In this document: piece by piece, positions 1-17,427 of the stretch
Numbering within the stretch: position 1 is the first letter of the stretch
Layout: each line of letters begins with the position of its first letter
NCBI RefSeq assembly: GCF_006345805.1
Contig: NW_021824202.1
Location: forward strand, 1-19,634
Direction: 5' to 3'
DNA: 19,634 nucleotides
DNA from: Octopus sinensis
Lineage: Eukaryota
Program-made: the position numbers and the translations under genes
The notes under the pieces: model-generated
What the model was told of the DNA's origin: nothing
Seen by the model: the letters and a program-made list of their open reading frames with translations, nothing else
Databases searched by the model: none

Positions 1-68
1 TATTATTAAGTTTTAAGTTTCTAGTTTGATAATAGAGTTTATTATAAGTAAAATTATTATATTATTTA

Positions 69-580
69 CTAGCAGTATCGCCCGGCGTTGCTCGGGTTTG
101 TAAGGGAAATAACTATATAAGCATTTTTAGAGAGTTACTTCCCTTATAGATGCCAATTCGGGCTTTCTTAGCCATTTCTGTTTTGGTGTCTTCAAGCCAT
201 GAAGTCGTTGTTCTAAAAGAACGCTGGCCTCCTTGACAACGCTTTACGACGTTGATTTCCTTACACTCCCTTCCCCACAGCTTCACGAGGGAGGGTAGAA
301 GGGGGAGAAGCAAACATGTGCAGGTGTGACCATGGACGCCAACTCCGCCGCCATCGACACACGAAAAATTATGCATTAAAATGGAATAAAAAATGATGTT
401 AAATTATTTTTAAAATCGTAGACTCATCGTAGACGCGCGCTAATACTCAGACGGGCTCGATATAATCACGACTATAAGATACCCGAATTTGGTTAAATTG
501 CACCGCAAAATGTGGGAGTAGTTAGGAATCTAAATCGAAGGGGACAGGCACTCACACAACTACAGTTTTATATATATAGA
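69..580 (-). mobile_element. Non-autonomous Helitron (512 bp), both termini intact
   Basis: The minus strand reads A|TCTATATATATAAAACTGTAG... at the 5' end (580) and ...CCCGAGCAACGCCGGG-CGATACTG-CTAG|T at the 3' end (69). This gives 5' TC, 3' CTAG, a GC-rich subterminal hairpin (81-96) 8 nt before CTAG, and insertion between A and T with no TSD, which is the canonical Helitron signature. No RepHel coding sequence is present. Confidence 0.82.
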
Positions 581-629
581 TATCTTTAAAATATTGTTTA
601 AATATTTCTGATTATTTTTAAAATATTTC

Positions 630-729
630 AATTAACCTGAAGATTGACTGTAACCATAACTCGAATTATTAATTGAATTTAAATTATTGTTATTCGAATT
701 GGTACAGCCATGAAACGATCGTAGTATTT
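630..729 (+). ncRNA. Type-I hammerhead-ribozyme-like motif (HHR-1), minimal/dimer type
   Basis: CTGAAGA at 637-643. Helix II base 645-656 pairs with 700-710 (10 WC pairs, 1 mismatch, 1 bulge). GAAAC at 712-716. Perfect palindrome ACGATCGT at 715-722. GUA triplet with the predicted cut after 723. Helix I is weak (C636-G724, A635-T725, then irregular). Confidence 0.6.
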
Positions 730-819
730 TACTCTTTATCTTTTATTAAACTTTTAATACTTTTGATATTTATTTAATAAAAAAATTAATTAATTAATTA
801 ATAAACAAAATAATATATA

Positions 820-829
820 AATATAAAAT

Positions 830-863
<34 letters not shown>

Positions 864-1151
864 TATTATATATTATATATATATATATATTATATATATA
901 TATATTTGTATATATATATTTAAAATTTATAAGTTTAAATTATTTTAATAATTTTTTAATTTTTAACTTTTATATTTTTAAATTAATTTTATGTATTGGC
1001 TTATGTTTTTCACTGTTTGATTTGCCTAATAGTGGTTTTATCTCTAATTTAATATAATATATATATATATATGTATGTATACATATATGTATGTATATAT
1101 ATATATTATGTATGTATGTATGTATGTATGTATGTATGCATGTATGTATGT
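820..1151. repeat. AT-rich low-complexity region with (TA)n, (ATAC)n and (TATG)n tracts
   Basis: Visible runs at about 828-920 and 1052-1151, separated by AT-rich sequence. Confidence 0.85.
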
Positions 1152-1955
1152 AATTTTTCTTGTTCTTCTGTGAATCGATTTCGATAAAACTTTATCCAGC
1201 TGGTTTGCACACTTGCTAGATCAGCTGGTTATGAAGAACTCAGTATACTTCTAGCCATCGCTCATCGTCTCTTTTTAACCAAATCCAGTCGCTAGGCTTC
1301 TCCACTGTAGATTGGATATCAGTCATGGTGGTATTGACTTTACGATGAGTTAAGCCTATCGATAACAACAGTCGTCTCACGCTGTGTCCAACAAACCCTC
1401 TACATCCGACTTCGATAGGAAAATGTTCCGCTTTCCAGCCTGCGTCTTCACATTCCTTGAGGAGATTTTCATAACGGTTCAATTTTCAGAAAATGAAGGA
1501 TGATGATAGATATTAAGTATACATTGAGTATATATTTAACAGAAATCCAAAATAATATTATAACATTTATTGACATAATGAATTATTAAGCCACATGAGC
1601 GCTAATGAAGAAACGATCTGATTGTGGGACCTCCAAGCCTGTGACAGTTTGGAATTTAAAGAATATTGGCTACAAGTTATGTGGGAGACCCGGCGTTATC
1701 ATATTATAATGGTTTTCTGTTAAATATATACTAAAGGTATGAAAATATGTTCATTTTCTGAAAAAATATAATGTCTAGATTGGCTATTTTCATTCAAAAG
1801 TTATTAGCGTGGTTCACCTAAAAAGTTAAGGATTTAAAATAAAAAGAAAGGACGTTACACAGAATAATGAAAACATAGCAATGGTGTTGTAATAATGTGC
1901 AAACAAGCTGGGAAAAATTTTATCAAAATCGATTCACAGAAAACCGAGAAATTCC
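1152..1955. mobile_element. Decayed fold-back/MITE-like element with long inverted arms; left arm interrupted by a HERO fragment
   Basis: The reverse complement of 1153-1212 (gtgcaaaccagctggataaagttttatcgaaatcgattcacagaa) matches 1897-1953 (gtgcaaacaagctgggaaaaattttatcaaaatcgattcacagaa). Segment 1483-1564 matches the reverse complement of 1695-1764 (ttttcagaaaatgaa...agtatatatttaacagaaa.cca..ataatat.ataac). The outer termini and TSD are not resolved. Confidence 0.6.
1213..1482 (-). pseudogene. C-terminal fragment of an RLE-type (R2-group, HERO-like) non-LTR retrotransposon ORF plus a short 3' flank
   Basis: The translation LNRYENLLKECEDAGWKAEHFPIEVGCRGFVGHSVRRLLLSIGL...VEKPSDWIWLKR matches the K/R-Y..L...C...GW.....P(I/V)EVG(C)RGF ... 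S.W.W.KR end of restriction-like-endonuclease LINEs, typical of HERO-like elements. No RT domain is present. Confidence 0.75.
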
Positions 1956-1992
1956 AATTTTCACACCTAAGCTATTAGCGTGGTTTTGGGTG

Positions 1993-1995
<3 letters not shown>

Positions 1996-2064
<69 letters not shown>
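1996..2064. repeat. (CA)n microsatellite
   Basis: Near-perfect AC run with one AT interruption. Confidence 0.95.
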
Positions 2065-2068
<4 letters not shown>

Positions 2069-2070
2069 GG

Positions 2071-2466
2071 ACAGAGGGTTTGAAAATGCGATTTTAAAGA
2101 TGTTTATGCACTTGACCTGTTTCACTTTTTTAGAAAAAGATTGGCAAAAGTAAAATCTAAAGCTTTGTACGAGCTTTGTTGTGTTAAGTACTGGTTATCA
2201 CAAAAGTATTAAAATACATATATATATATTCTTTGGTAATAATAAGAAAATGTTAAAAACAGTTTACAAGAAAGTAATCAGAACAGGACTCCAAAAAGTA
2301 TTATGAGATCAATAAAAATCATGTTTGTTTGGTTGTACATATATATATATATAGAGAGAAGGCGGGTTAGCACGCCGGGTGAAATGCGTAGCCGTATTTC
2401 GTCTGCCGTTACGTTCTGGGTTAAAATTCCGCCGAGGTCGACTTTGCATTTCATCCTTTCGGATAT

Positions 2467-2498
<32 letters not shown>

Positions 2499-2743
2499 CA
2501 GAGGTAGATATATTTAAGAATACACAAAACATTGTTGAGGAATAACTGACCTGTCTTTCTGACACTTTCTTATTATTATCAAAGAATGTATAACTGTGTT
2601 TTAATACTTTTGTGATAACCAGTACTTAACACAACAAAGCTCATACAAAGGTTTTGCATTTTACTTTTGACAATCATTTTATAAAAAAGTGAAACCGATC
2701 AAGTGAATAAACATCTTTAAAATCACATTTTCAAACCTTTCAT
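2071..2743. mobile_element. MITE with ~190-bp terminal inverted repeats
   Basis: Segment 2071-2262 aligns with the reverse complement of 2551-2743 along its whole length, including an identical 40+ nt block gagctttgttgtgttaagtactggttatcacaaaagtattaaaa. It lies in TA/CA-rich flanks. A Tc1/mariner affiliation is an inference. Confidence 0.85.
2359..2462 (+). mobile_element. tRNA-derived SINE, family B (internally deleted, 3'-truncated), inside (TA)n within the MITE
   Basis: aaggcgg|gttagcacgccgggtgaaatgc...ggttaaaattccgccgaggtcgactttgcatttcatcctttcgg is homologous to the minus-strand copies at 14590, 15423 and 17229. The A-box segment is deleted relative to those copies. Confidence 0.8.
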
Positions 2744-2826
2744 ATATATTTCCACTCGTGCGGTACCTCACAAATTTACTTTGTTTTATATATATATATA
2801 TATATACCTACGTTGGCCGTAAAAAC

Positions 2827-2876
<50 letters not shown>

Positions 2877-2882
2877 CAGTAG
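2827..2882. repeat. (AGT)n microsatellite
   Basis: About 17 pure AGT units followed by cagtag. Confidence 0.95.
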
Positions 2883-3252
2883 CTACTACTATTACGGCTA
2901 ACGGTCATTTTCACGCTTAAAGCCAACGAATCTAGTCAACGCACAAGACAGCCATTATACTCCCCCCACCACAAAAATACCACCACGTGGACTCTGTTGA
3001 GACTAGTAAGAAACAATTATGGACTTTTTTATTACACTTAACTTTTAAAAAATATTTTTGATAAGGTTCGTTTTTCCAAGAAGAACCGAAACATGCAAAA
3101 TCTCTAAGAAAATTAAAATTTATCTTATATAGTGGCGTTTTCGAACGCATGCACACACACACACGTCTATATGCGCACATAACCGCACACGCACACACAC
3201 ACACATCCAAACGAGCGCACAAAAGATTTATGCATATATATATATAAACTAC

Positions 3253-3603
3253 GTAGCTGTGTGACTAAAATGCTTGCTTTCCAGCCATGTGGTCTTGGGT
3301 TCAGTATCACCGCGTAGCACGTTGAACAATTTTGTTTTTAATACAGCCCCAAGCCGGCCAATGCCCTCTGAGTGGATTTTGCAGAGAGAAACTGAAAGAA
3401 ACCCGAAATATGTATGTATGTTTCTCTGTGTGTGTTCCTTTGTGGTTACCCCAACCGACGTTATTCAGCTACTGCTTGTTTGCTTACGTCTCGGTAACTT
3501 TCCGGGTAGACAAAAGATACCTATAGAATAAGTATCGAGTATAAACTAGTACTGGATCGATTTGTTCCACTAACCCTTCAAGAAAGCATTCCATCAAGGC
3601 CGT
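3253..3603 (+). mobile_element. tRNA-derived SINE, family A, near full length, old
   Basis: Head gtagctgtgtgactaaaatgcttgc...gggttcagt, body gagtggattttgcagagagaaactgaaagaaaccc, internal (TATG/TG) tract and 3' module. Colinear with the copies at 6896-7037 and 11947-12335. Confidence 0.7.
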
Positions 3604-3605
3604 AT

Positions 3606-3607
<2 letters not shown>

Positions 3608-3670
<63 letters not shown>

Positions 3671-3724
3671 CATTATTTGATCGAACGCCACGCATCCATT
3701 TCCAAGTATGTTATCTCATATATA

Positions 3725-3785
<61 letters not shown>
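3608..3785. repeat. Two (TA)n tracts enclosing a 47-bp island (3671-3717)
   Basis: Directly visible. The island matches 10460-10490 at 28 of 31 nt. Confidence 0.9.
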
Positions 3786-3786
<1 letters not shown>

Positions 3787-3788
<2 letters not shown>

Positions 3789-3996
3789 GAGATTCAGATG
3801 AATTAGGTACCAAAAATTAGTGCAGTATTATCCGTACAACTTCAAAATAAGGTGAATAGAAATCAAAATAAGCAACAGGATATCCAGAGGTGATGTAGTA
3901 CGACCGTTTCATGCGGCTCCATTTAATTGAACAATGCAATCATTACATCAATTTAAATGGAGGGCTATCCTCAGCTGCATAAATAAATATAATTTT
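3787..3996 (-). mobile_element. Putative Penelope-like pseudo-LTR / retrozyme-like terminal remnant carrying HHR-2
   Basis: About 210 bp of non-coding sequence bounded by (TA)n. It contains a hammerhead core followed by a T-rich 3' tract. The PLE assignment is inferred from the ribozyme type only; no RT or GIY-YIG ORF is in the window. Confidence 0.45.
3893..3980 (-). ncRNA. Type-I hammerhead-ribozyme-like motif (HHR-2), minimal/dimer type
   Basis: Minus strand: ATGCAG-CTGAGGA-tagcc-CTCCATTTAAATTGA...TCAATTAAATGGAG-ccgcat-GAAAC-GGTC-GTA-CTACAT. Helix I has 5 of 6 pairs. Helix II has a 14-bp stem with one bulge. Helix III ACGGUCGU is self-complementary with two G-U pairs. The predicted cut is between 3899 and 3898. 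Confidence 0.68.
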
Positions 3997-4176
3997 AAAA
4001 ATCAGTTGGACACATTTGTACAATTTTACTTAAATCCTCTAAGAGGGTAGAAGTTTCTAAGACATCAGAAATATATATATGCGCGCACGCACACACCCAC
4101 ATATACATACACAAAACAATAACTTCACCACCACTACAATACAATATATATATGTACATGTATATATATATATATG

Positions 4177-4208
<32 letters not shown>

Positions 4209-4914
4209 CAGACACACAACAATAACCGCACCTACACTACAATATAATGCATGATATCCCCAACGAGGGACCGTATAACTGCTATTCGATCTTCTAAAGA
4301 GTGAAATTTCCCTATACCATAAGGAAAGAGGGAATCAGCTAATGCCGCAAACAAATCCTGAAAAGGACGGAATGGTCATGGTTGGAATATCATTGACTAT
4401 TAATGATGTTTTTCTGTTGATAATGCGAATGTAAAAGGAAATGATGCAATTGAAATTTGTAAAGTGTCCCAAAGAAGCGACATCTCGCAAGTAATTGTAT
4501 CGTAACAATTAAACATCAATTAGATCGAATCAGTGAGTTCAATATAATCTGCTATTTCATTGGCTTATCTTTAAATCTCAGGCAAACATTGTTTCTCTCT
4601 TTCTCTACGGACAAACTATATCTGATATCCCTTCTACTCACCCTGTCCCTTTCTCTATCTCTGCAGATACGCCAATAGATACGGTCTCACTTATTCATTA
4701 GTAACTGCTGCAGCTATAGATACATTGATGTTATTACATTTCAATACAGTAAATGAAAGAAGAAAACAACAAGCATTTAACATTTAGTTTTTCCTCTGAC
4801 AAATATCTCTCTTCGCCTTATAATTCTTCCCCCTTTTATATATTTTTGTAACAGTTTATATAATTGTATATTAATAATGATAATGATGATAATGATAATC
4901 ATTATCATTACAGA

Positions 4915-5308
<394 letters not shown>

Positions 5309-6895: not shown

Positions 6896-7037
6896 GGCTG
6901 TGTGGTAAGAAGTTTGCTTCCCAACCGCATGGTTCCGGGTTCATGCCACCGCGTCGGGAAAGTCTTTTTTACTATAACTTTGGTTCGACCAAAGCTTTGT
7001 GAGTGGGTTTGTGAGACGGAAACTGAAAGAAGCTCGT
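6896..7037 (+). mobile_element. SINE family A, 5' head and core only
   Basis: ggctgtgtggtaagaagtttgcttcccaaccgcatggttccgggttca has a tRNA-like head with A/B-box-like motifs, followed by gtgagtgggtttgtgagacggaaactgaaagaagctcgt. Confidence 0.8.
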
Positions 7038-7362: not shown

Positions 7363-8565
7363 CGAGGGGTGTTCATCAAAGATATCCCCTGACCCATTTC
7401 CGGTTATTACAGGAAACGGAACTTGTACAGGTATAATCATACATGTCATATTACGGCTGCTGAAGTGGACTAAGGTGTTATAATGGAGGCAGTTGAATGC
7501 AAATAAGTGATTAGGTTCTTATACTTGAAAGGTCGAACACCAAAAGAAACTCTCAATGCGATGAAAGAAGTTTATGGTGACAATGCACCATCACACGCCA
7601 TAGTCAAGTACGGGCATCGCCAGTTCAAATGTGGTCGGACATCGACGGAAACTGCTCCTATTTCTGAACGACCACATTCCGCATTTGCCGACGACACCAT
7701 CTTTTAAGTGGAAGCCGCCATTTTGGAGGATTACAGCATAACTATTTGACAACTATCCCCAAAAGCGAAGACAAATGTAGGGTCCGGGAAAAAAATCATT
7801 TACGACCATTTGCACACGCGGAAGTTGTCTGTACAATGAATTCCCCAGATACTCACACCTTTTCAGAAGCAGGAACGAATCAATTGCTCCCAGGCTCATT
7901 TGGTTATGTGTCAAGAAAATGAAGAGGACTTTTCGGCATACTTATGACACAGGATTATGACACAGGGTCCATCACTAAGATCCTGAGAATAAAGTCCAGT
8001 CAAAGCAATGGAAGCATGATAATTCACCACCTCAAAAGAAGACTCGTGTCCAACCCTAAGCAGGCAGGGTGATGCTCACAGTCTCTTGGGACCAGCGCGG
8101 AGTAGTGATCCGATGGATCTGGAAAAGGACACCACAATTAACAAGACATATTTCCCTACTGCAGAAATTGCGGGACGTCATCAAAGCAGAGAGGCGTGGT
8201 ATGCTAACCAAAGGAGTCCGCCTCCTCCAAGACAACCTCCCAGCTCACAATGCGCATATTGCCCAGATGAAAGCACACTCCTGCGACTATTAAATACTTC
8301 CTCATCCCCTCTTATTCTCCCTACCTCGCACCATCTGACTTCCACCTCTTTCCAACCATGAAGTCTTTTTTGAAGGGAAGCACTTTTTAGATGATGATGA
8401 ACTTATTTCCGAGGTAAAGTCTAGGCTCCGGACGCAACCCACCGACTTCTACAGACGAGGTCTTCACAGCTGCATATGTAGAGAAGGACTAATAATTATG
8501 TATAGTTTCGTTTATCCCAGTCCTTGTGAAGTGGGTCAGAGGAAATCTTTAATAAACACCCCTCG
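7363..8565 (+). mobile_element. Mariner (Tc1/mariner, D,D34D) transposon copy 1, near full length, defective
   Basis: 38-nt TIRs starting cgaggggtgtt (33 of 38 identical), TA duplications at 7361-7362 and 8566-8567, and a transposase remnant inside. Confidence 0.93.
7483..8492 (+). pseudogene. Mariner transposase pseudogene
   Basis: MEAVECK*VIRFLYLKGRTPKE...(W)IPQILT...GRVMLTVSWDQRGV...LLQDNLPAH...SYSPYLAPSDFHLFP. Multiple stops and frameshifts, and a C-terminal deletion. Confidence 0.9.
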
Positions 8566-10547: not shown

Positions 10548-10566
10548 ACACACACACACATATATA

Positions 10567-11834
10567 CGAGGGGCGTTCAATAAGTAATGCCCCTGACCCA
10601 CTTCCCATAGCAGTAGAGCAACGACACTTGGCACAGTTATTAGTCTTTTCCTACATAGGAACTACCTAGAGTTATGCATTTCTCCCATCGTTTGATACAG
10701 CTCTGGAGACCGTTTTTGTAGAAGACCCCAGCTTGGTCCTCCACCACGACGTGACTTCAGAAATCAAGGCTGCATCATCTGGGAAACGCTTTCCTTTCAA
10801 AATCAACTTCATGGCTGGGAAGAGTGAAAATCAGAGGGTGCAAGGGGAGGAGTTCATAGCTGCACGCCTGTGCTTCTGATCTGGCGACACGCGAGTTGTG
10901 GACCGGAGCGTTGTCCTGCAGGAGGAGAATGCCTTTGCTGATCTTGCCCCGCCTCTTGATTTTGATAGCTTCTCTTAATTTCCTCAAAAGTGAAGCATAA
11001 TAGGCTCCTGTAATTGTGGTACCCTTTGCCAGGAAATCTGTCATCACTACTCCGTCCTGGTCCCAGAAGACTGTGAGCATAACCTTGTCAGCGGAGGGCT
11101 GCACCCTTGCCTTCTTTGGAGGAGGTGAGTCACGGTGCTTTCACTGCATTGACTAGGCTTTGGTCTATGGATCATAGTGATGGACCCAGGTTTTATCCTG
11201 TGTGATCAGTCTTTTGAAAAATTTTGATTCATCTTCTTGGCACATCTCCAAATTCATCCTCGAGCACTCAACGCGTTCTTGCTTCTGGAAAGGTGTGAGC
11301 AACCTGGAAATCCATCTGGCAGACACCTTGGGCATATGCAAATGGTCATGAATGATAGTTTCCACAGACCCGGTACTAATCTTGACCTTATAGTCTATTT
11401 GGCGAATAGTTATGCGATGACCTTCCAAAATGGCAGCCTCAACTTGACGGACAGACGTCTCATCAACGGCAGAAGGGGGCGACCAGATCTGGGAGCTGTT
11501 TCCACAGAGTTCCGACTATGTTTGAATTCACAATGCCAGCGTTTTACAAGGTCATATGATGGGGCATCATCACCATAAGTTACTTTCATTTCATCAAAAG
11601 TCTCCCGTGGAGTGCGTCCTTTCAAATACAAAAACCAGATCACTGCTCGACACTCAACAGGCTCCATTTCACACTTGACTCAGTTCAAACACCTGTAAAT
11701 CAGAAACCACAATTAGTTCAGAGCTGTAATTCGCTACTTAATCTATAGAGGTATAAATAAGTGCACATGCAAAAGTTCAGCTAGATCAAACAATTGCAAG
11801 TGGGTCCGGGGCATTACTCATTGAACGCCCCTCG
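10567..11834 (-). mobile_element. Mariner transposon copy 2, full length (1268 bp), defective
   Basis: 37-nt TIRs cgaggggcgttcaat(a/g)agtaatgcccc(t/g)gacccactt (35 of 37 identical), TA duplications at 10565-10566 and 11835-11836, inserted in (TA)/(CA) tracts. Confidence 0.95.
10640..11667 (-). pseudogene. Mariner transposase pseudogene (irritans-subfamily-like, tentative)
   Basis: MEPVECRAVIWFLYLKGRTP...KVSARWISRLLT...LITQDKTWVHHYDP...KVMLTVFWDQDGV...LLQDNAPVH...LAPSD...KRWEKC. Several frameshifts, and the (P)YSPD part of the third motif is deleted. Confidence 0.93.
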
Positions 11835-14589: not shown

Positions 14590-14790
14590 AATCCTTTCTA
14601 CTGTAGGCACAAGGCTTAAAATTTGGTGGAGGGAGATAGTCGATTACATCGACCTCTGTACTCAACTGGTACTTATTTCATCGACCCCGAAAGGAGTAAA
14701 GGCAAAATCGACCTCGGGGGAACTTGAACTCTGACAGACGAAATGCTGCCTAAACATTTTGTTCGGCGTGTTAATGATTCTGCCAGCTTG
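14590..14790 (-). mobile_element. SINE family B
   Basis: aatcctttctact...tagtcgattacatcgacc...ctggtacttatttcatcgaccccgaaagg...ctgccagc. The central gcctttactcctttcggggtcgatgaaataagtacc (minus strand) resembles the MetaSINE central domain (tentative). Confidence 0.85.
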
Positions 14791-15422: not shown

Positions 15423-15629
15423 AATCCTTTTCTACTATTGGCACAAGGCCTAGATATTGTGGGGAGCGAGATAGTCGATCACATCGATCCAGTACTCAAA
15501 TGGTACTTAATTTATCGAACCTGAAAGAACGAAAGACTTTGGCGGAATTTGAACCCAGAACATAGCGACGGGCGAAATACCGCTAAGCATTTTTCCAGCC
15601 TACTAACGATTCTGCCAGCTCACCGCCTT
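15423..15629 (-). mobile_element. SINE family B
   Basis: The minus strand begins aaggcggtgagctggcagaatcgttag (A-box-like TGGCAGAATCG), has gggttcaaattcc (B-box-like), and ends in an (ATT)n tail. Confidence 0.88.

Positions 15630-15635: not shown

Positions 15636-15711
<76 letters not shown>
15631..15711. repeat. (AAT)n microsatellite, 5' flank of the LINE
   Basis: Directly visible. Confidence 0.95.
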
Positions 15712-15714
<3 letters not shown>

Positions 15715-16905
15715 ATAGGAGAATAAGGCTTGTACTGAAGACTGAACTCAACTCTAAAAATTGCATTGAGGCCATTAACACCCTGGCACTTCCAGTAGTC
15801 CAGTACAGTTTTAACATCATTAACTGGAACCTTACGGAACTCCAACGCTTGGACAGGAAGACAAGAAAATTACTGACATCCAAGAACATACACCACCCTA
15901 GGGCAGATGTAGACCGCCCGTACCTACCTAGAAGCAGCGGGGGGAGAGGAATGATGCAATTAGAGCTGTGCTATAAGACCTCCACTGTAGGAATGAACAT
16001 GTACCTATCTAGTACAAAGGACTGGATGCTGCGACTTGTGTGCGAACACGAAAGCAGCAAAATGCTGCATTCTATTGTCAAGGAATCTTATAAGTTCGAA
16101 AGGGAACTAGACATTAACCTTGAATCAGATGAAGAGCTGGAAACCCCTGCTACCAAGCAAGCAAAGCGAATCAAGCAGACTGCAAAAAAGAACGGGCAGA
16201 ATCAAATTGAGAGGCGGTGGAGCCGGAAGCCCCTGCATGGACAATATATTCTCCGAAGCCAAAATGCTGATGTAGACCAAGCAACAACCCATCAGTGGCT
16301 GAAGAGTTTAGGATTGAAAGCAGATACTGAAGGCTTCATACTGGCAGCACAAGATCAAAGCTTGTTTACCAGAAATTACCAGGCTAGCGTTCCCCGAAAC
16401 GGTACTGACCCTAAATGCAGATTCTGCGACACATTTGTCGAAACAATAGACCATCGCGTTTCGGGATGTCCTGTGTTGACACCAAACGAATACAAAAATC
16501 GCCACGATAGGGTAGGACAGTATATACATTGGAAGATATGTAAACACTACAAATTCGGCACTCCTGCTAACTGGTATGAACATCATCCTCAGCCAGATGT
16601 TGAAGGTAAAAATGTCACCATCCTCTGGGACTAATAGAGGTAAGCGTCCCCACTGATAACAATAGAAGTAAGCGTCCCCACTGATAACAATATATCTGTA
16701 AAGGAATTTGACAAACTTAGTAAATATAAGGACCTGGAAATCGAAATACAAAAGATGTGGAATCTTAAAACAAAAACTAGGTATGATAAAAAAGGGATGT
16801 CAGAAACACCTAGACAATATCCCTGGAGAACCATGTCTCAAGGAAATCCAAAAGATTGTGCTAACAAGTACTGCCCACATCCTTAGAAAAACCCTATCAA
16901 TGTAA
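15711..16905 (+). pseudogene. R4/Dong-like ORF C-terminal part (thumb/linker, CCHC knuckle, RLE endonuclease), disrupted
   Basis: Open from 15711 (YYRRIRLVLKTELNSKNCIEAINTLALPVVQYSF...DRKTRKLL...DR(P)YLPRSSGGRGM...KPLHGQY...EGFILAAQDQ...CRFCDTFVETIDHRVSGC = C-x2-C-x8-H-x4-C...RHDRV...ILWD*). After a frameshift: IEVSVP...KLSKYKDLEIE...GMIKK...AHILRKTLSM*. The 'PD' catalytic segment is absent. Confidence 0.9.
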
Positions 16906-17056
16906 ATGTTTGTGTTGTATTACATGGAGATATTTCTCTACTTCCCCTCCACAAGCTTTCAGCTATATTTCAACAACTCTTAACCTTCACTTGCCCTAGG
17001 GCGCTGGGTGTGCCCCGGCAAGTGATTGCATCAAACATGCAGATTAAAAGTAAATG
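15711..17056 (+). mobile_element. 5'-truncated R4/Dong-like RLE non-LTR retrotransposon
   Basis: Post-RT, zinc-knuckle and endonuclease coding remnant, a 150-bp 3' UTR and a (TAA)n tail. The 5' end abuts (AAT)n. Confidence 0.9.
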
Positions 17057-17229: not shown

Positions 17230-17427
17230 TCAAATTTTTGCCACAACGGCAGCTTGTGGGAGGTGGAGATAAGTCGATCGCATCGACTGGTACTTATTTT
17301 ATCGATCCCGAAAGGATGAAAGGCAAAGTCGACCTCGGCGAAATTTGAACTTAGAACATAGCGACGGGTGAAATACCGCTAAGCATTTTGTCCAGCGTGC
17401 TAATTATTCTGCCAGCTCACTTCCTCC
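17229..17427 (-). mobile_element. SINE family B, alternative 3'-end variant
   Basis: The body ctggtacttattttatcgatcccgaaaggatgaaaggcaaagtcgacctcggcgaaatttgaac is well conserved. The 3' end (ttcaaatttttgccacaacggc on the plus strand) differs from the aatcctttctact type. Confidence 0.88.

What the first reader, a model, noticed from the sequence alone, without database searches (positions are those of the whole stretch)
630..3980. HHR-1 and HHR-2 covary: a possible non-canonical 'U-U, long helix II, GRUC-loop' hammerhead class
Seen: both share CAU-GAAAC-GRUC-GUA and a U directly after CUGANGA, while their helix II sequences are unrelated yet both pair. The helix I closing pair is C-G in HHR-1 and G-C in HHR-2, a compensatory swap. 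Their upstream flanks are loosely similar (ctgatt.tttttaaaat..attt). Their helix III palindromes (ACGAUCGU and ACGGUCGU) could also cross-pair fully with one wobble, so cross-family heterodimers are conceivable (speculation). Two structurally matching cores within 3.3 kb are hard to explain by chance and suggest a high-copy ribozyme-bearing family. I cannot tell from here whether it is already described.
Basis: partly seen in the sequence, partly recalled or inferred. Interest (0 to 1): 0.85.

Follow-up and report, generated by a model that had tools for sequence, protein, structure and literature searches.

The report
Two diverged minimal hammerhead ribozyme motifs
Two short repeat copies lying in TA microsatellites of an animal genome each carry an intact-looking hammerhead (self-cleaving RNA) core of the dimer-dependent type known from Penelope-like retroelements, but with an unusually long middle hairpin; this is an odd variant of a known kind, supported so far by two copies only.

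Summary
Window 637-723 (+) and 3974-3899 (-) both read CTGANGA-T-[long hairpin]-CAT-GAAAC-GRTC-GTA. No shuffle of the window gives this composite pattern. The only hits in 241 million metagenome records are bacterial coding sequences without the hairpin. Both inserts fold end to end into 21-bp imperfect hairpins (z about -3 and -4.6), yet their sequences cannot be aligned. The 5' flanks and core boxes are homologous.

Each copy is a ~230-285 bp orphan element inside (TA)n, with no RT or endonuclease remnant nearby. The anatomy matches the minimal type I hammerheads of Penelope-like elements and animal retrozymes: full catalytic core, GUA cleavage triplet, and a 2-bp helix III with a palindromic tetraloop. 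That helix III is predicted to form an 8-bp intermolecular helix in dimers.

The "new class" claim is only partly supported. A U·U at the base of helix II with a 2-bp helix III is already published for axolotl HHR_Amex2. Palindromic helix III is the PLE hallmark. Only the 57-68 nt helix II is unusual.

No Rfam hammerhead model matches. Helix I is weak in HHR-1. Covariation rests on two sequences, and no further copies could be retrieved. Verdict: probable relic copies of a PLE/retrozyme-type hammerhead variant, of modest interest.

The parts
580..812 (+). Element e1: about 233-bp orphan repeat copy carrying HHR-1. It lies between a short (AT)4 at 570-577 and the (AT)n array at 813-919.
   Evidence: Sequence. 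TRF arrays. Homology to e2 over the 5' flank and core. No Pfam domain in any frame of 1-4998.
584..625 (+). Conserved 5' flank block of e1 (TTTAA..AATATTGT..AAAT..CTGATT..TTTTTAAAAT), partly a 21-nt internal duplication. Role unknown; a promoter or pLTR-like segment is a guess.
   Evidence: 32/43 identical to the e2 flank, z 2.9. TRF period 21 at 592-634.
637..643 (+). HHR-1 5' core box C3 U4 G5 A6 A7 G8 A9
644..711 (+). HHR-1 helix II: 68 nt, 21 predicted pairs, closed by U644·U711 (positions 10.1/11.1)
   Evidence: Fold z -3.1, 0/200 shuffles as good. Structure.
712..723 (+). HHR-1 3' core: G12 A13 A14, then helix III A15.1-U16.1 and C-G closed by the palindromic loop GAUC, then A17. Predicted cleavage after 723.
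   Evidence: An 8-bp intermolecular helix III appears in the homodimer MFE, ddG -10.2 kcal/mol.
3786..4070 (-). Element e2: about 285-bp orphan repeat copy carrying HHR-2. It lies between (AT)5 at 4071-4080 and the (AT)n array at 3609-3785.
   Evidence: Sequence. TRF. Homology to e1.
3968..3974 (-). HHR-2 5' core box C3 U4 G5 A6 G7 G8 A9
3911..3967 (-). HHR-2 helix II: 57 nt, 21 predicted pairs. U·U and A·A sit at the base, followed by G-C and C-G.
   Evidence: Fold z -4.6, 1/200 shuffles as good. Structure.
3899..3910 (-). HHR-2 3' core: GAA, then helix III A-U and C-G with loop GGUC, then A17. Predicted cleavage after 3899 (between 3899 and 3898).
   Evidence: Self-duplex -5.8 kcal/mol and duplex with the HHR-1 palindrome -9.4 kcal/mol.

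Best explanation
HHR-1 and HHR-2 are two old, diverged, solo copies of a short non-autonomous retroelement. Equivalently, they may be 5'-truncated 3' ends of a Penelope-like element. Both inserted into (TA)n microsatellites.

Each copy carries a minimal type I hammerhead ribozyme motif of the PLE/retrozyme kind. In the element's RNA, the CUGANGA and GAAA boxes are brought together by a long helix II of 21 bp with bulges. Helix III is only A-U and C-G closed by a palindromic tetraloop, which is too weak in a monomer. Two copies, in tandem or on two transcripts, would therefore pair their ACGRUCGU stretches into an 8-bp intermolecular helix III. This forms a double hammerhead that cleaves after GUA and leaves 5'-OH and 2',3'-cyclic phosphate ends. 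Cleavage would process, and possibly circularise, the element's RNA.

Shown here: the motif, the hairpins, the predicted dimer helix, the homology of the two copies, and the (TA)n context.

Inferred: transcription, cleavage, the need for dimers, and mobilisation by a PLE reverse transcriptase/endonuclease.

The two copies in this window lie on opposite strands, are not tandem, and are most likely inert relics.
For: - All invariant core positions, the A15.1-U16.1 pair and an allowed GUA triplet are present in both copies.
- The composite pattern never occurs in shuffles. In metagenomes it occurs only as hairpin-less chance hits.
- Helix II folds significantly in both copies (also z about -3.0 and -4.7 by mononucleotide shuffles) although the sequences are unalignable. 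The boxes on either side are 21/23 identical.
- The only two box differences fall on N7 and on a loop-3 base; the loop change still allows a G·U in the dimer.
- The 5' flanks are homologous.
- The predicted MFE of the HHR-1 homodimer and of the HHR-1/HHR-2 heterodimer uses the 8-bp helix III.
- Both elements are embedded in (TA)n, a preferred target of several PLE clades (PMC8557442).
- Published PLE min-HHRs share the short palindromic helix III, an enlarged helix II, a short helix I, dispersed solo copies and pairs on opposite strands (PMC4209133).
- U·U at the base of helix II is compatible with cleavage in axolotl HHR_Amex2 (PMC7229834).
Against: - Only two copies are available, so there is no position-resolved covariation.
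- No Rfam hammerhead model matches, even at E<=10 on 140-160-nt stretches. A 57-68 nt helix II would be heavily penalised by those models, so this is a weak negative.
- G10.1-C11.1, described as highly conserved in PLE min-HHRs, is replaced by U·U. HHR-2 adds an A·A next to it.
- Helix I is 2 bp plus scattered A-U pairs in HHR-1.
- The boxes are only marginally better conserved than the best 5' flank block (P about 0.04).
- The MFE of HHR-2 pairs its 5' flank with the GCAUGAA box, an inactive alternative fold.
- No RT or GIY-YIG remnant lies within 5 kb.
- The whole elements are not rod-like (z -0.9).
- Published PLE min-HHRs cleave poorly in vitro.
Confidence: 0.6

Rival explanations
1. Hairpin-bearing AT-rich repeat with a fortuitous or long-dead hammerhead-like core. 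The boxes are shared only by descent from one ancestral copy, and no member of the family cleaves.
For: - There are only two copies.
- Box conservation is barely above the best flank block (P 0.04).
- 10.1/11.1 is non-canonical and HHR-1 has a weak helix I.
- No Rfam hit.
- A chance occurrence in one founder would be multiplied by transposition.
Against: - The interior between the boxes has diverged beyond alignment while still forming a 21-bp hairpin in both copies. Uniform neutral decay does not predict this.
- The two box differences sit at the two kinds of position a hammerhead leaves free.
- The helix III palindrome is kept as a pairing-competent octamer in both.
Confidence: 0.25
2. The conserved 3' box and hairpin form a 3'-terminal recognition or priming structure for a (TA)n-targeting retrotransposon, for example a Naiad-like PLE. 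On this view it is not a working ribozyme, and the hammerhead-like boxes are a vestige.
For: - Similarity between the copies stops within 2-3 nt after GTA, as if the shared element ended there.
- Both copies are in (TA)n.
- Craig et al. report Naiads with split 'HHR_half_core' motifs that proliferate without canonical HHRs.
Against: - About 90-113 nt of non-microsatellite sequence follows the GTA in both copies before (TA)n resumes, so the insert does not end at the box.
- No Naiad coding remnant is present.
- This view gives no reason for a complete 11-position catalytic core to be kept.
Confidence: 0.1
3. The long hairpins are the functional units, either small-RNA precursors or palindromic MITE-like cores, and the flanking boxes are incidental.
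For: The hairpins are the only significantly structured parts of the elements. Weak sub-threshold miRNA-model matches cover HHR-2's hairpin (mir-2059, 16.7 bits against a gathering score of 90).
Against: - The hairpin sequences are not conserved between copies, whereas the flanking boxes are.
- The miRNA hits are far below threshold and of the same kind as the microsatellite noise across the window.
- There are no terminal inverted repeats or target-site duplications.
Confidence: 0.05

Closest known systems
Minimal type I hammerheads (min-HHRs) of Penelope-like elements (Cervera & de la Pena 2014, PMC4209133; also Lunse et al. 2017, which I could not read)
   Same: - Type I topology and a full catalytic core.
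- Helix III reduced to 1-2 bp with a palindromic loop, so activity is expected only as dimers.
- Helix II larger than canonical, helix I short, and no loop-loop tertiary contacts.
- A base directly after A9.
- Mostly dispersed solo copies, sometimes pairs on opposite strands.
- Extreme sequence variability within a genome.
   Different: - Helix II here is 57-68 nt (21 bp) against 6-8 bp.
- The 'highly conserved' G10.1-C11.1 is U·U.
- There is no PLE ORF or pLTR context at this locus.
- Family size is unknown.
Axolotl retrozyme hammerhead HHR_Amex2 (Cervera & de la Pena 2020, PMC7229834)
   Same: U·U mismatch at the base of helix II, combined with a 2-bp helix III capped by a tetraloop. It cleaves weakly as a monomer (22% in 1 h) and efficiently as a dimer.
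   Different: Amex2 has a canonical short helix II with loop 1-loop 2 contacts. It sits in 350-bp tandem repeats expressed as circRNAs. Here the copies are solo, not tandem, and the elements are not predicted to be rod-like.
'HHR_core' / 'HHR_half_core' motifs noted in Naiad PLEs (Craig et al. 2021, PMC8557442)
   Same: The two halves of the hammerhead core are separated by an unusually long spacer. The host elements insert preferentially into (TA)n microsatellites. The motifs are missed by standard HHR descriptors.
   Different: Reported spacings are 35-50 nt, and the authors did not claim a folded or active ribozyme.
Rfam hammerhead covariance models (types I, II, III, HH9, HH10; family names from my own knowledge)
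   Same: Same core consensus.
   Different: No match at gathering score, nor at E<=10.

Membership tests
Hammerhead ribozyme (general) | Invariant core C3 U4 G5 A6 N7 G8 A9 ... G12 A13 A14 | tested here: met
   CUGAAGA/GAA in HHR-1 and CUGAGGA/GAA in HHR-2
Hammerhead ribozyme (general) | A15.1-U16.1 pair and cleavage triplet N-U-H (H not G) | tested here: met
   GAAAC-GRUC-GUA in both copies, with A17
Hammerhead ribozyme (general) | Helix II closing the two core strands | tested here: met
   End-to-end hairpins of 21 bp each, z -3.1 and -4.6
Hammerhead ribozyme (general) | G10.1-C11.1 (or another Watson-Crick pair) stacking on the core | tested here: not met
   U·U in both copies. HHR-2 also has A·A at 10.2/11.2. 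U·U has a precedent in HHR_Amex2.
Hammerhead ribozyme (general) | Helix I pairing of the 5' flank with the sequence 3' of the cleavage site | tested here: inconclusive
   HHR-1: 2 bp, a 3x3 loop, then 2 A-U pairs. HHR-2: 5 of the first 6 pairs, chance about 0.03.
Hammerhead ribozyme (general) | Score above threshold with curated covariance models | tested here: not met
   No hammerhead family listed at gathering score or at E<=10
Hammerhead ribozyme (general) | Site-specific self-cleavage | not testable with these tools
   Needs in vitro transcription of monomer and dimer constructs
PLE minimal hammerhead (min-HHR) | Type I topology with helix III of 0-2 bp and palindromic 15.2-16.2/loop 3, allowing a dimeric extended helix III | tested here: met
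   ACGAUCGU is a perfect palindrome. ACGGUCGU self-pairs with two G·U. Duplex energies are -10.0, -5.8 and -9.4 kcal/mol, and the dimer MFE uses this helix.
PLE minimal hammerhead (min-HHR) | Extra nucleotide between A9 and 10.1, with G10.1-C11.1 conserved | tested here: not met
   A U follows A9 in both copies. Treating it as a bulge gives worse pairing than the U·U register, and no G-C closes the helix at 10.1/11.1.
PLE minimal hammerhead (min-HHR) | Helix II of about 6-8 bp | tested here: not met
   57 and 68 nt, 21 predicted pairs each
PLE minimal hammerhead (min-HHR) | Location in the pseudo-LTR of an element encoding RT and GIY-YIG endonuclease (most genomic copies are solo) | tested here: not met
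   No Pfam domain in six frames of window 1-4998. The only RT in the window is a non-LTR type at 15849-16634.
PLE minimal hammerhead (min-HHR) | Large intragenomic families with compensatory changes | not testable with these tools
   The source genome is not in any searchable collection
Animal non-LTR retrozyme | Head-to-tail tandem repeats of about 150-400 bp, each with one type I HHR | tested here: not met
   Two solo copies 3.2 kb apart on opposite strands, with no tandem array of the unit
Animal non-LTR retrozyme | Monomer RNA highly self-paired (rod-like) | tested here: not met
   Whole elements fold no better than shuffles (z -0.95 and -0.86)
Naiad-type PLE 'HHR_half_core' | Insertion in (TA)n and core halves far apart | tested here: inconclusive
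   The (TA)n context is met. Spacing of 57-68 nt is longer than the published 35-50 nt. No Naiad sequence was available for comparison.

The most novel reading that the evidence does not exclude
These copies represent a genuine, widespread sub-class of retroelement hammerheads: a long, freely evolving helix II closed by U·U, and a GRUC palindromic helix III. Standard descriptors and Rfam models systematically miss this class. It would correspond to the unexplained 'HHR_half_core' motifs of (TA)n-targeting PLEs. If so, PLE clades now described as lacking hammerheads would in fact carry functional, dimer-dependent ones.
Probability: 0.12. Interest if true: 0.55.

Novelty: new variant of a known kind. 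Interest (0 to 1): 0.3.

Why it matters
If the family is real and active, it widens the structural envelope of natural hammerheads. A 60-nt helix II and a U·U closing pair would be tolerated in a dimer-dependent motif. It would also show that descriptor and covariance-model searches undercount retroelement ribozymes, and it could resolve whether the PLE clades reported as hammerhead-less really are. If the copies are only relics, they are an ordinary footprint of PLE/retrozyme activity in a repeat-rich invertebrate-type genome.

Tried and rejected
- **Rfam.** I searched the whole window at gathering score and at E<=10, then each motif alone. No hammerhead appeared, only microsatellite-driven miRNA noise.
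- **More copies in the window.** An exact descriptor and a one-mismatch descriptor with a helix II test found none. The other CTGANGA...GAAA pairs have no closing hairpin. Sensitive blastn of the elements against the window found only each other and AT-rich noise.
- **Public collections.** The full pattern gave 3 chance hits in metagenomes and 0 in viral contigs.
- **Window repeats as handles for same-host DNA.** SINE-like repeats of the window gave 0 hits in viral contigs and one stray hit, not examined further, in a bacterial MAG.
- **Sampling the source genome through TE proteins.** I spent three homologue searches. The window's own ORFs are not in the protein collection. Fetched loci were Oratosquilla, Penaeus indicus and unnamed ENA eukaryotic contigs (L004-L012). 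They share only the mariner or RT segments, none of the window's SINE-like repeats, and no copy of the motif. The species therefore stayed unidentified. My initial guess of an octopus rests on memory of a SINE and is unverified.
- **Literature string searches.** Searches for the 3' box and for SINE k-mers found nothing relevant. Supplements of the two key PLE papers are not held, and Lunse et al. 2017 is not held.
- **Solo insertion of a cleaved linear monomer.** On this idea, the complement of the helix I 5' strand would sit at the element's 5' end. I checked this only by eye on the sequences printed; I did not see it.
- **Rod-like retrozyme fold of the whole elements.** Rejected.
- **A covariance model from two sequences.** Judged uninformative and not built.


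Full report
**What is there**

The window is AT-rich eukaryotic DNA (37% G+C). At least 9% is perfect short tandem repeat. It holds mariner and non-LTR retrotransposon remnants and several SINE-like repeats.

At 637-723 on the + strand and at 3974-3899 on the - strand, the sequence reads CTGANGA-T-[hairpin]-CAT-GAAAC-GRTC-GTA. In hammerhead numbering, both copies have the following:
- C3 U4 G5 A6 N7 G8 A9.
- U at 10.1, a long helix II, and U at 11.1.
- G12 A13 A14.
- Helix III made of A15.1-U16.1 and C15.2-G16.2, closed by GAUC (HHR-1) or GGUC (HHR-2).
- A17 as the cleavage nucleotide.

**Is it more than chance?**

- The loose pattern CTGANGA-N45-75-GAAAC is expected 0.2 times per window and occurs twice.
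- The full shared pattern occurs in none of 200 dinucleotide shuffles.
- In 241 million metagenome records the same pattern has three matches (two distinct loci). All lie in GC-rich bacterial sequence whose spacer does not fold end to end (z -0.3 and -0.2). There are none in IMG/VR.
- Of all CTGANGA...GAAA combinations in the window, only these two have a spacer that closes into a single hairpin. A one-mismatch descriptor finds no decayed third copy.

**Anatomy**

The helix II inserts (68 and 57 nt, counting the U·U) each form 21 predicted pairs with a few bulges. Energies are -13.8 and -16.6 kcal/mol, z -3.1 and -4.6.

Their sequences are not significantly similar: 132 of 1000 shuffles align as well. 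By contrast, the boxes on either side are 21/23 identical. The two differences fall on N7 and on one loop-3 base, which are the positions a hammerhead leaves free.

About 43 nt of the 5' flank is 74% identical (z 2.9, 9/500 shuffles). The whole-element local alignment beats all 1000 shuffles. The 3' flanks are unrelated. The two are therefore diverged copies of one repeat family, in which the boxes and a hairpin, but not the hairpin's sequence, have been kept. I stress that the boxes are only marginally better conserved than the best flank block (P about 0.04). The contrast with the unalignable interior is the stronger argument.

Helix I is weak:
- HHR-1 has C-G and A-U, then a 3x3 loop, then two A-U pairs.
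- HHR-2 has five of the first six positions paired, with chance about 0.03.

Helix III is too short to be stable in a monomer. However, ACGAUCGU is a perfect palindrome and ACGGUCGU self-pairs with two G·U. Predicted duplex energies are -10.0, -5.8 and -9.4 kcal/mol for 1x1, 2x2 and 1x2. The cofold MFE of the HHR-1 homodimer and of the heterodimer uses exactly this 8-bp intermolecular helix.

The MFE of HHR-2 alone pairs its 5' flank (UUUAUGC) with GCAUGAA of the 3' box. This is an alternative, inactive fold.

**Context**

Each motif sits in a short unique insert bounded by (TA)n:
- e1 is about 580-812, between (AT)4 and the 813-919 array.
- e2 is about 4070-3786, between (AT)5 and the 3609-3785 array.

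No Pfam domain is found in any frame of window 1-4998, so there is no RT or endonuclease next to either copy. The whole elements fold no better than shuffles, and they are not tandem. The copies are convergent, on opposite strands, so a single transcript cannot contain both in sense.

**Comparison with what is known**

- Cervera and de la Pena (PMC4209133) describe thousands of minimal type I hammerheads in metazoan genomes. [quoted passage not shown] These motifs have a short helix I, an enlarged helix II (6-8 bp), a base between A9 and 10.1, a conserved G10.1-C11.1, and a minimal palindromic helix III that implies action as dimers. Their in vitro activity is low.
- The same group describes axolotl HHR_Amex2, with about 60,000 copies. 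It has a U·U mismatch at the base of helix II and a 2-bp helix III with a tetraloop. It cleaves 22% as a monomer and efficiently as a dimer (PMC7229834).
- Craig et al. (PMC8557442) show that several PLE clades prefer (TA)n targets. They also report that Naiads lack canonical hammerheads, yet some carry the core, including eight cases with the halves 35-50 nt apart.
- A 2026 preprint argues that animal retrozymes derive from PLE pseudo-LTRs.

Against this background, the GRUC/2-bp helix III and the U·U are not new. The 57-68 nt helix II is the only clear departure.

No Rfam hammerhead model reports the motifs, even at E<=10 on isolated stretches. This is expected for such an insert and is a weak negative.

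**Mechanism proposed**

I propose that these are retroelement hammerheads. In tandem copies, or between two transcripts, they would form a double hammerhead through the palindromic helix III. They would then cleave after GUA and process the element's RNA, possibly allowing circularisation. Mobilisation would be by a PLE enzyme that targets (TA)n.

Only the sequence anatomy, the predicted folds, the homology of the copies and the insertion context are shown here. Transcription, cleavage, dimer dependence and the PLE link are inferred. The two copies in this window are probably inert relics.

I put about 0.6 on this reading and 0.25 on a dead or fortuitous core in a hairpin-bearing repeat. Smaller weights go to a 3'-end recognition structure (0.1) and to a hairpin small-RNA source (0.05).

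**Limits**

Everything rests on two sequences. I could not obtain any more members.
- The source genome is not represented in the protein-indexed assemblies. The window's own ORFs are absent, and the best relatives are 77-95% identical on short anonymous contigs.
- None of the loci I fetched shares the window's SINE-like repeats or the motif.
- Scans with the window's repeats found nothing useful.

Copy number, covariation, and association with a particular PLE clade therefore remain untested.

**Verdict**

'New class' is overstated. This is best filed as a new variant (long helix II) of the known PLE/retrozyme minimal type I hammerhead, of modest interest unless a genome-wide family with covariation or cleavage activity is demonstrated.

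Noticed in passing
window 10564-11667 (-) and 7810-8396 (+): Decayed mariner/Mos1-type transposon. Its ORFs hit Transposase_1 and HTH_48. A second partial copy lies in inverted orientation (arms 7965-8109 / 11043-11187, 77% complementary). The closest named relatives are crustacean SETMAR-like annotations (Oratosquilla 88% nt, Scylla), plus 91% nt to an anonymous metagenome contig. This suggests a widely shared, possibly horizontally spread mariner lineage.
   Followed up: partly
window 15711-17053 (+): C-terminal part of a non-LTR retrotransposon RT ORF (261 aa, 15849-16634). It has no Pfam hit itself, but its relatives carry RVT_1 / zf-RVT. It has 272 relatives, including Clytia, Penaeus and Acropora, at 50-77% identity.
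   Followed up: partly
window 14662-14730 / 17283-17351; 15535-15593 / 17331-17389; 3355-3405 / 6986-7036; 2360-2460: Several SINE-like interspersed repeats (75-90% identical pairs), some followed by (ATA)n/(TAA)n tails. ARAGORN calls no tRNA. From memory they resemble cephalopod (octopus) SINEs, but I could not verify the organism. None occurs in the crustacean or other loci I fetched.
   Followed up: partly
window 2077-2259 and 2556-2737: Long inverted repeat: three collinear arm pairs, 81-88% complementary, about 180 nt per side. It flanks a 300-nt centre containing a SINE-like insert and (TA)n. It looks like a foldback or MITE-like element, or an inverted duplication.
   Followed up: partly
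window 1240-1482 (-): An 80-aa ORF (…GWKAEHFPIEVGCRGF…) with no Pfam domain. It has nine 50-70% identical relatives on short anonymous ENA/JGI/Logan contigs. It is probably a fragment of an uncharacterised transposable-element protein, and it lies between the two hammerhead copies on the minus strand.
   Followed up: partly
window 592-634 (+): The 5' flank of HHR-1 is itself a 2.1-copy tandem duplication of a 21-nt unit (TATTGTTAAAATATTTCTAAT-like). HHR-2's flank shows the same two-part layout. Each unit contains a CTGATT, a near-miss of the CUGAUGA box.
   Followed up: no
window 3666-3714: A 49-nt unique segment splits the long (TA)n array downstream of HHR-2 into two blocks (3609-3665 and 3715-3785). 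It might be a short insertion 'tail' of the kind described at PLE insertion ends, or an unrelated remnant.
   Followed up: no
L010 13478-13508, L011 13478-13508, L012 11261-11291 (+): Unnamed ENA eukaryotic contigs, fetched through the RT homologue, carry CTGATGA-AAATTCGTTTTT-GAAAC-AAGA-GTC next to the LINE copy. This is a hammerhead-like string with only a 3-bp A-U helix II, and is probably chance.
   Followed up: no
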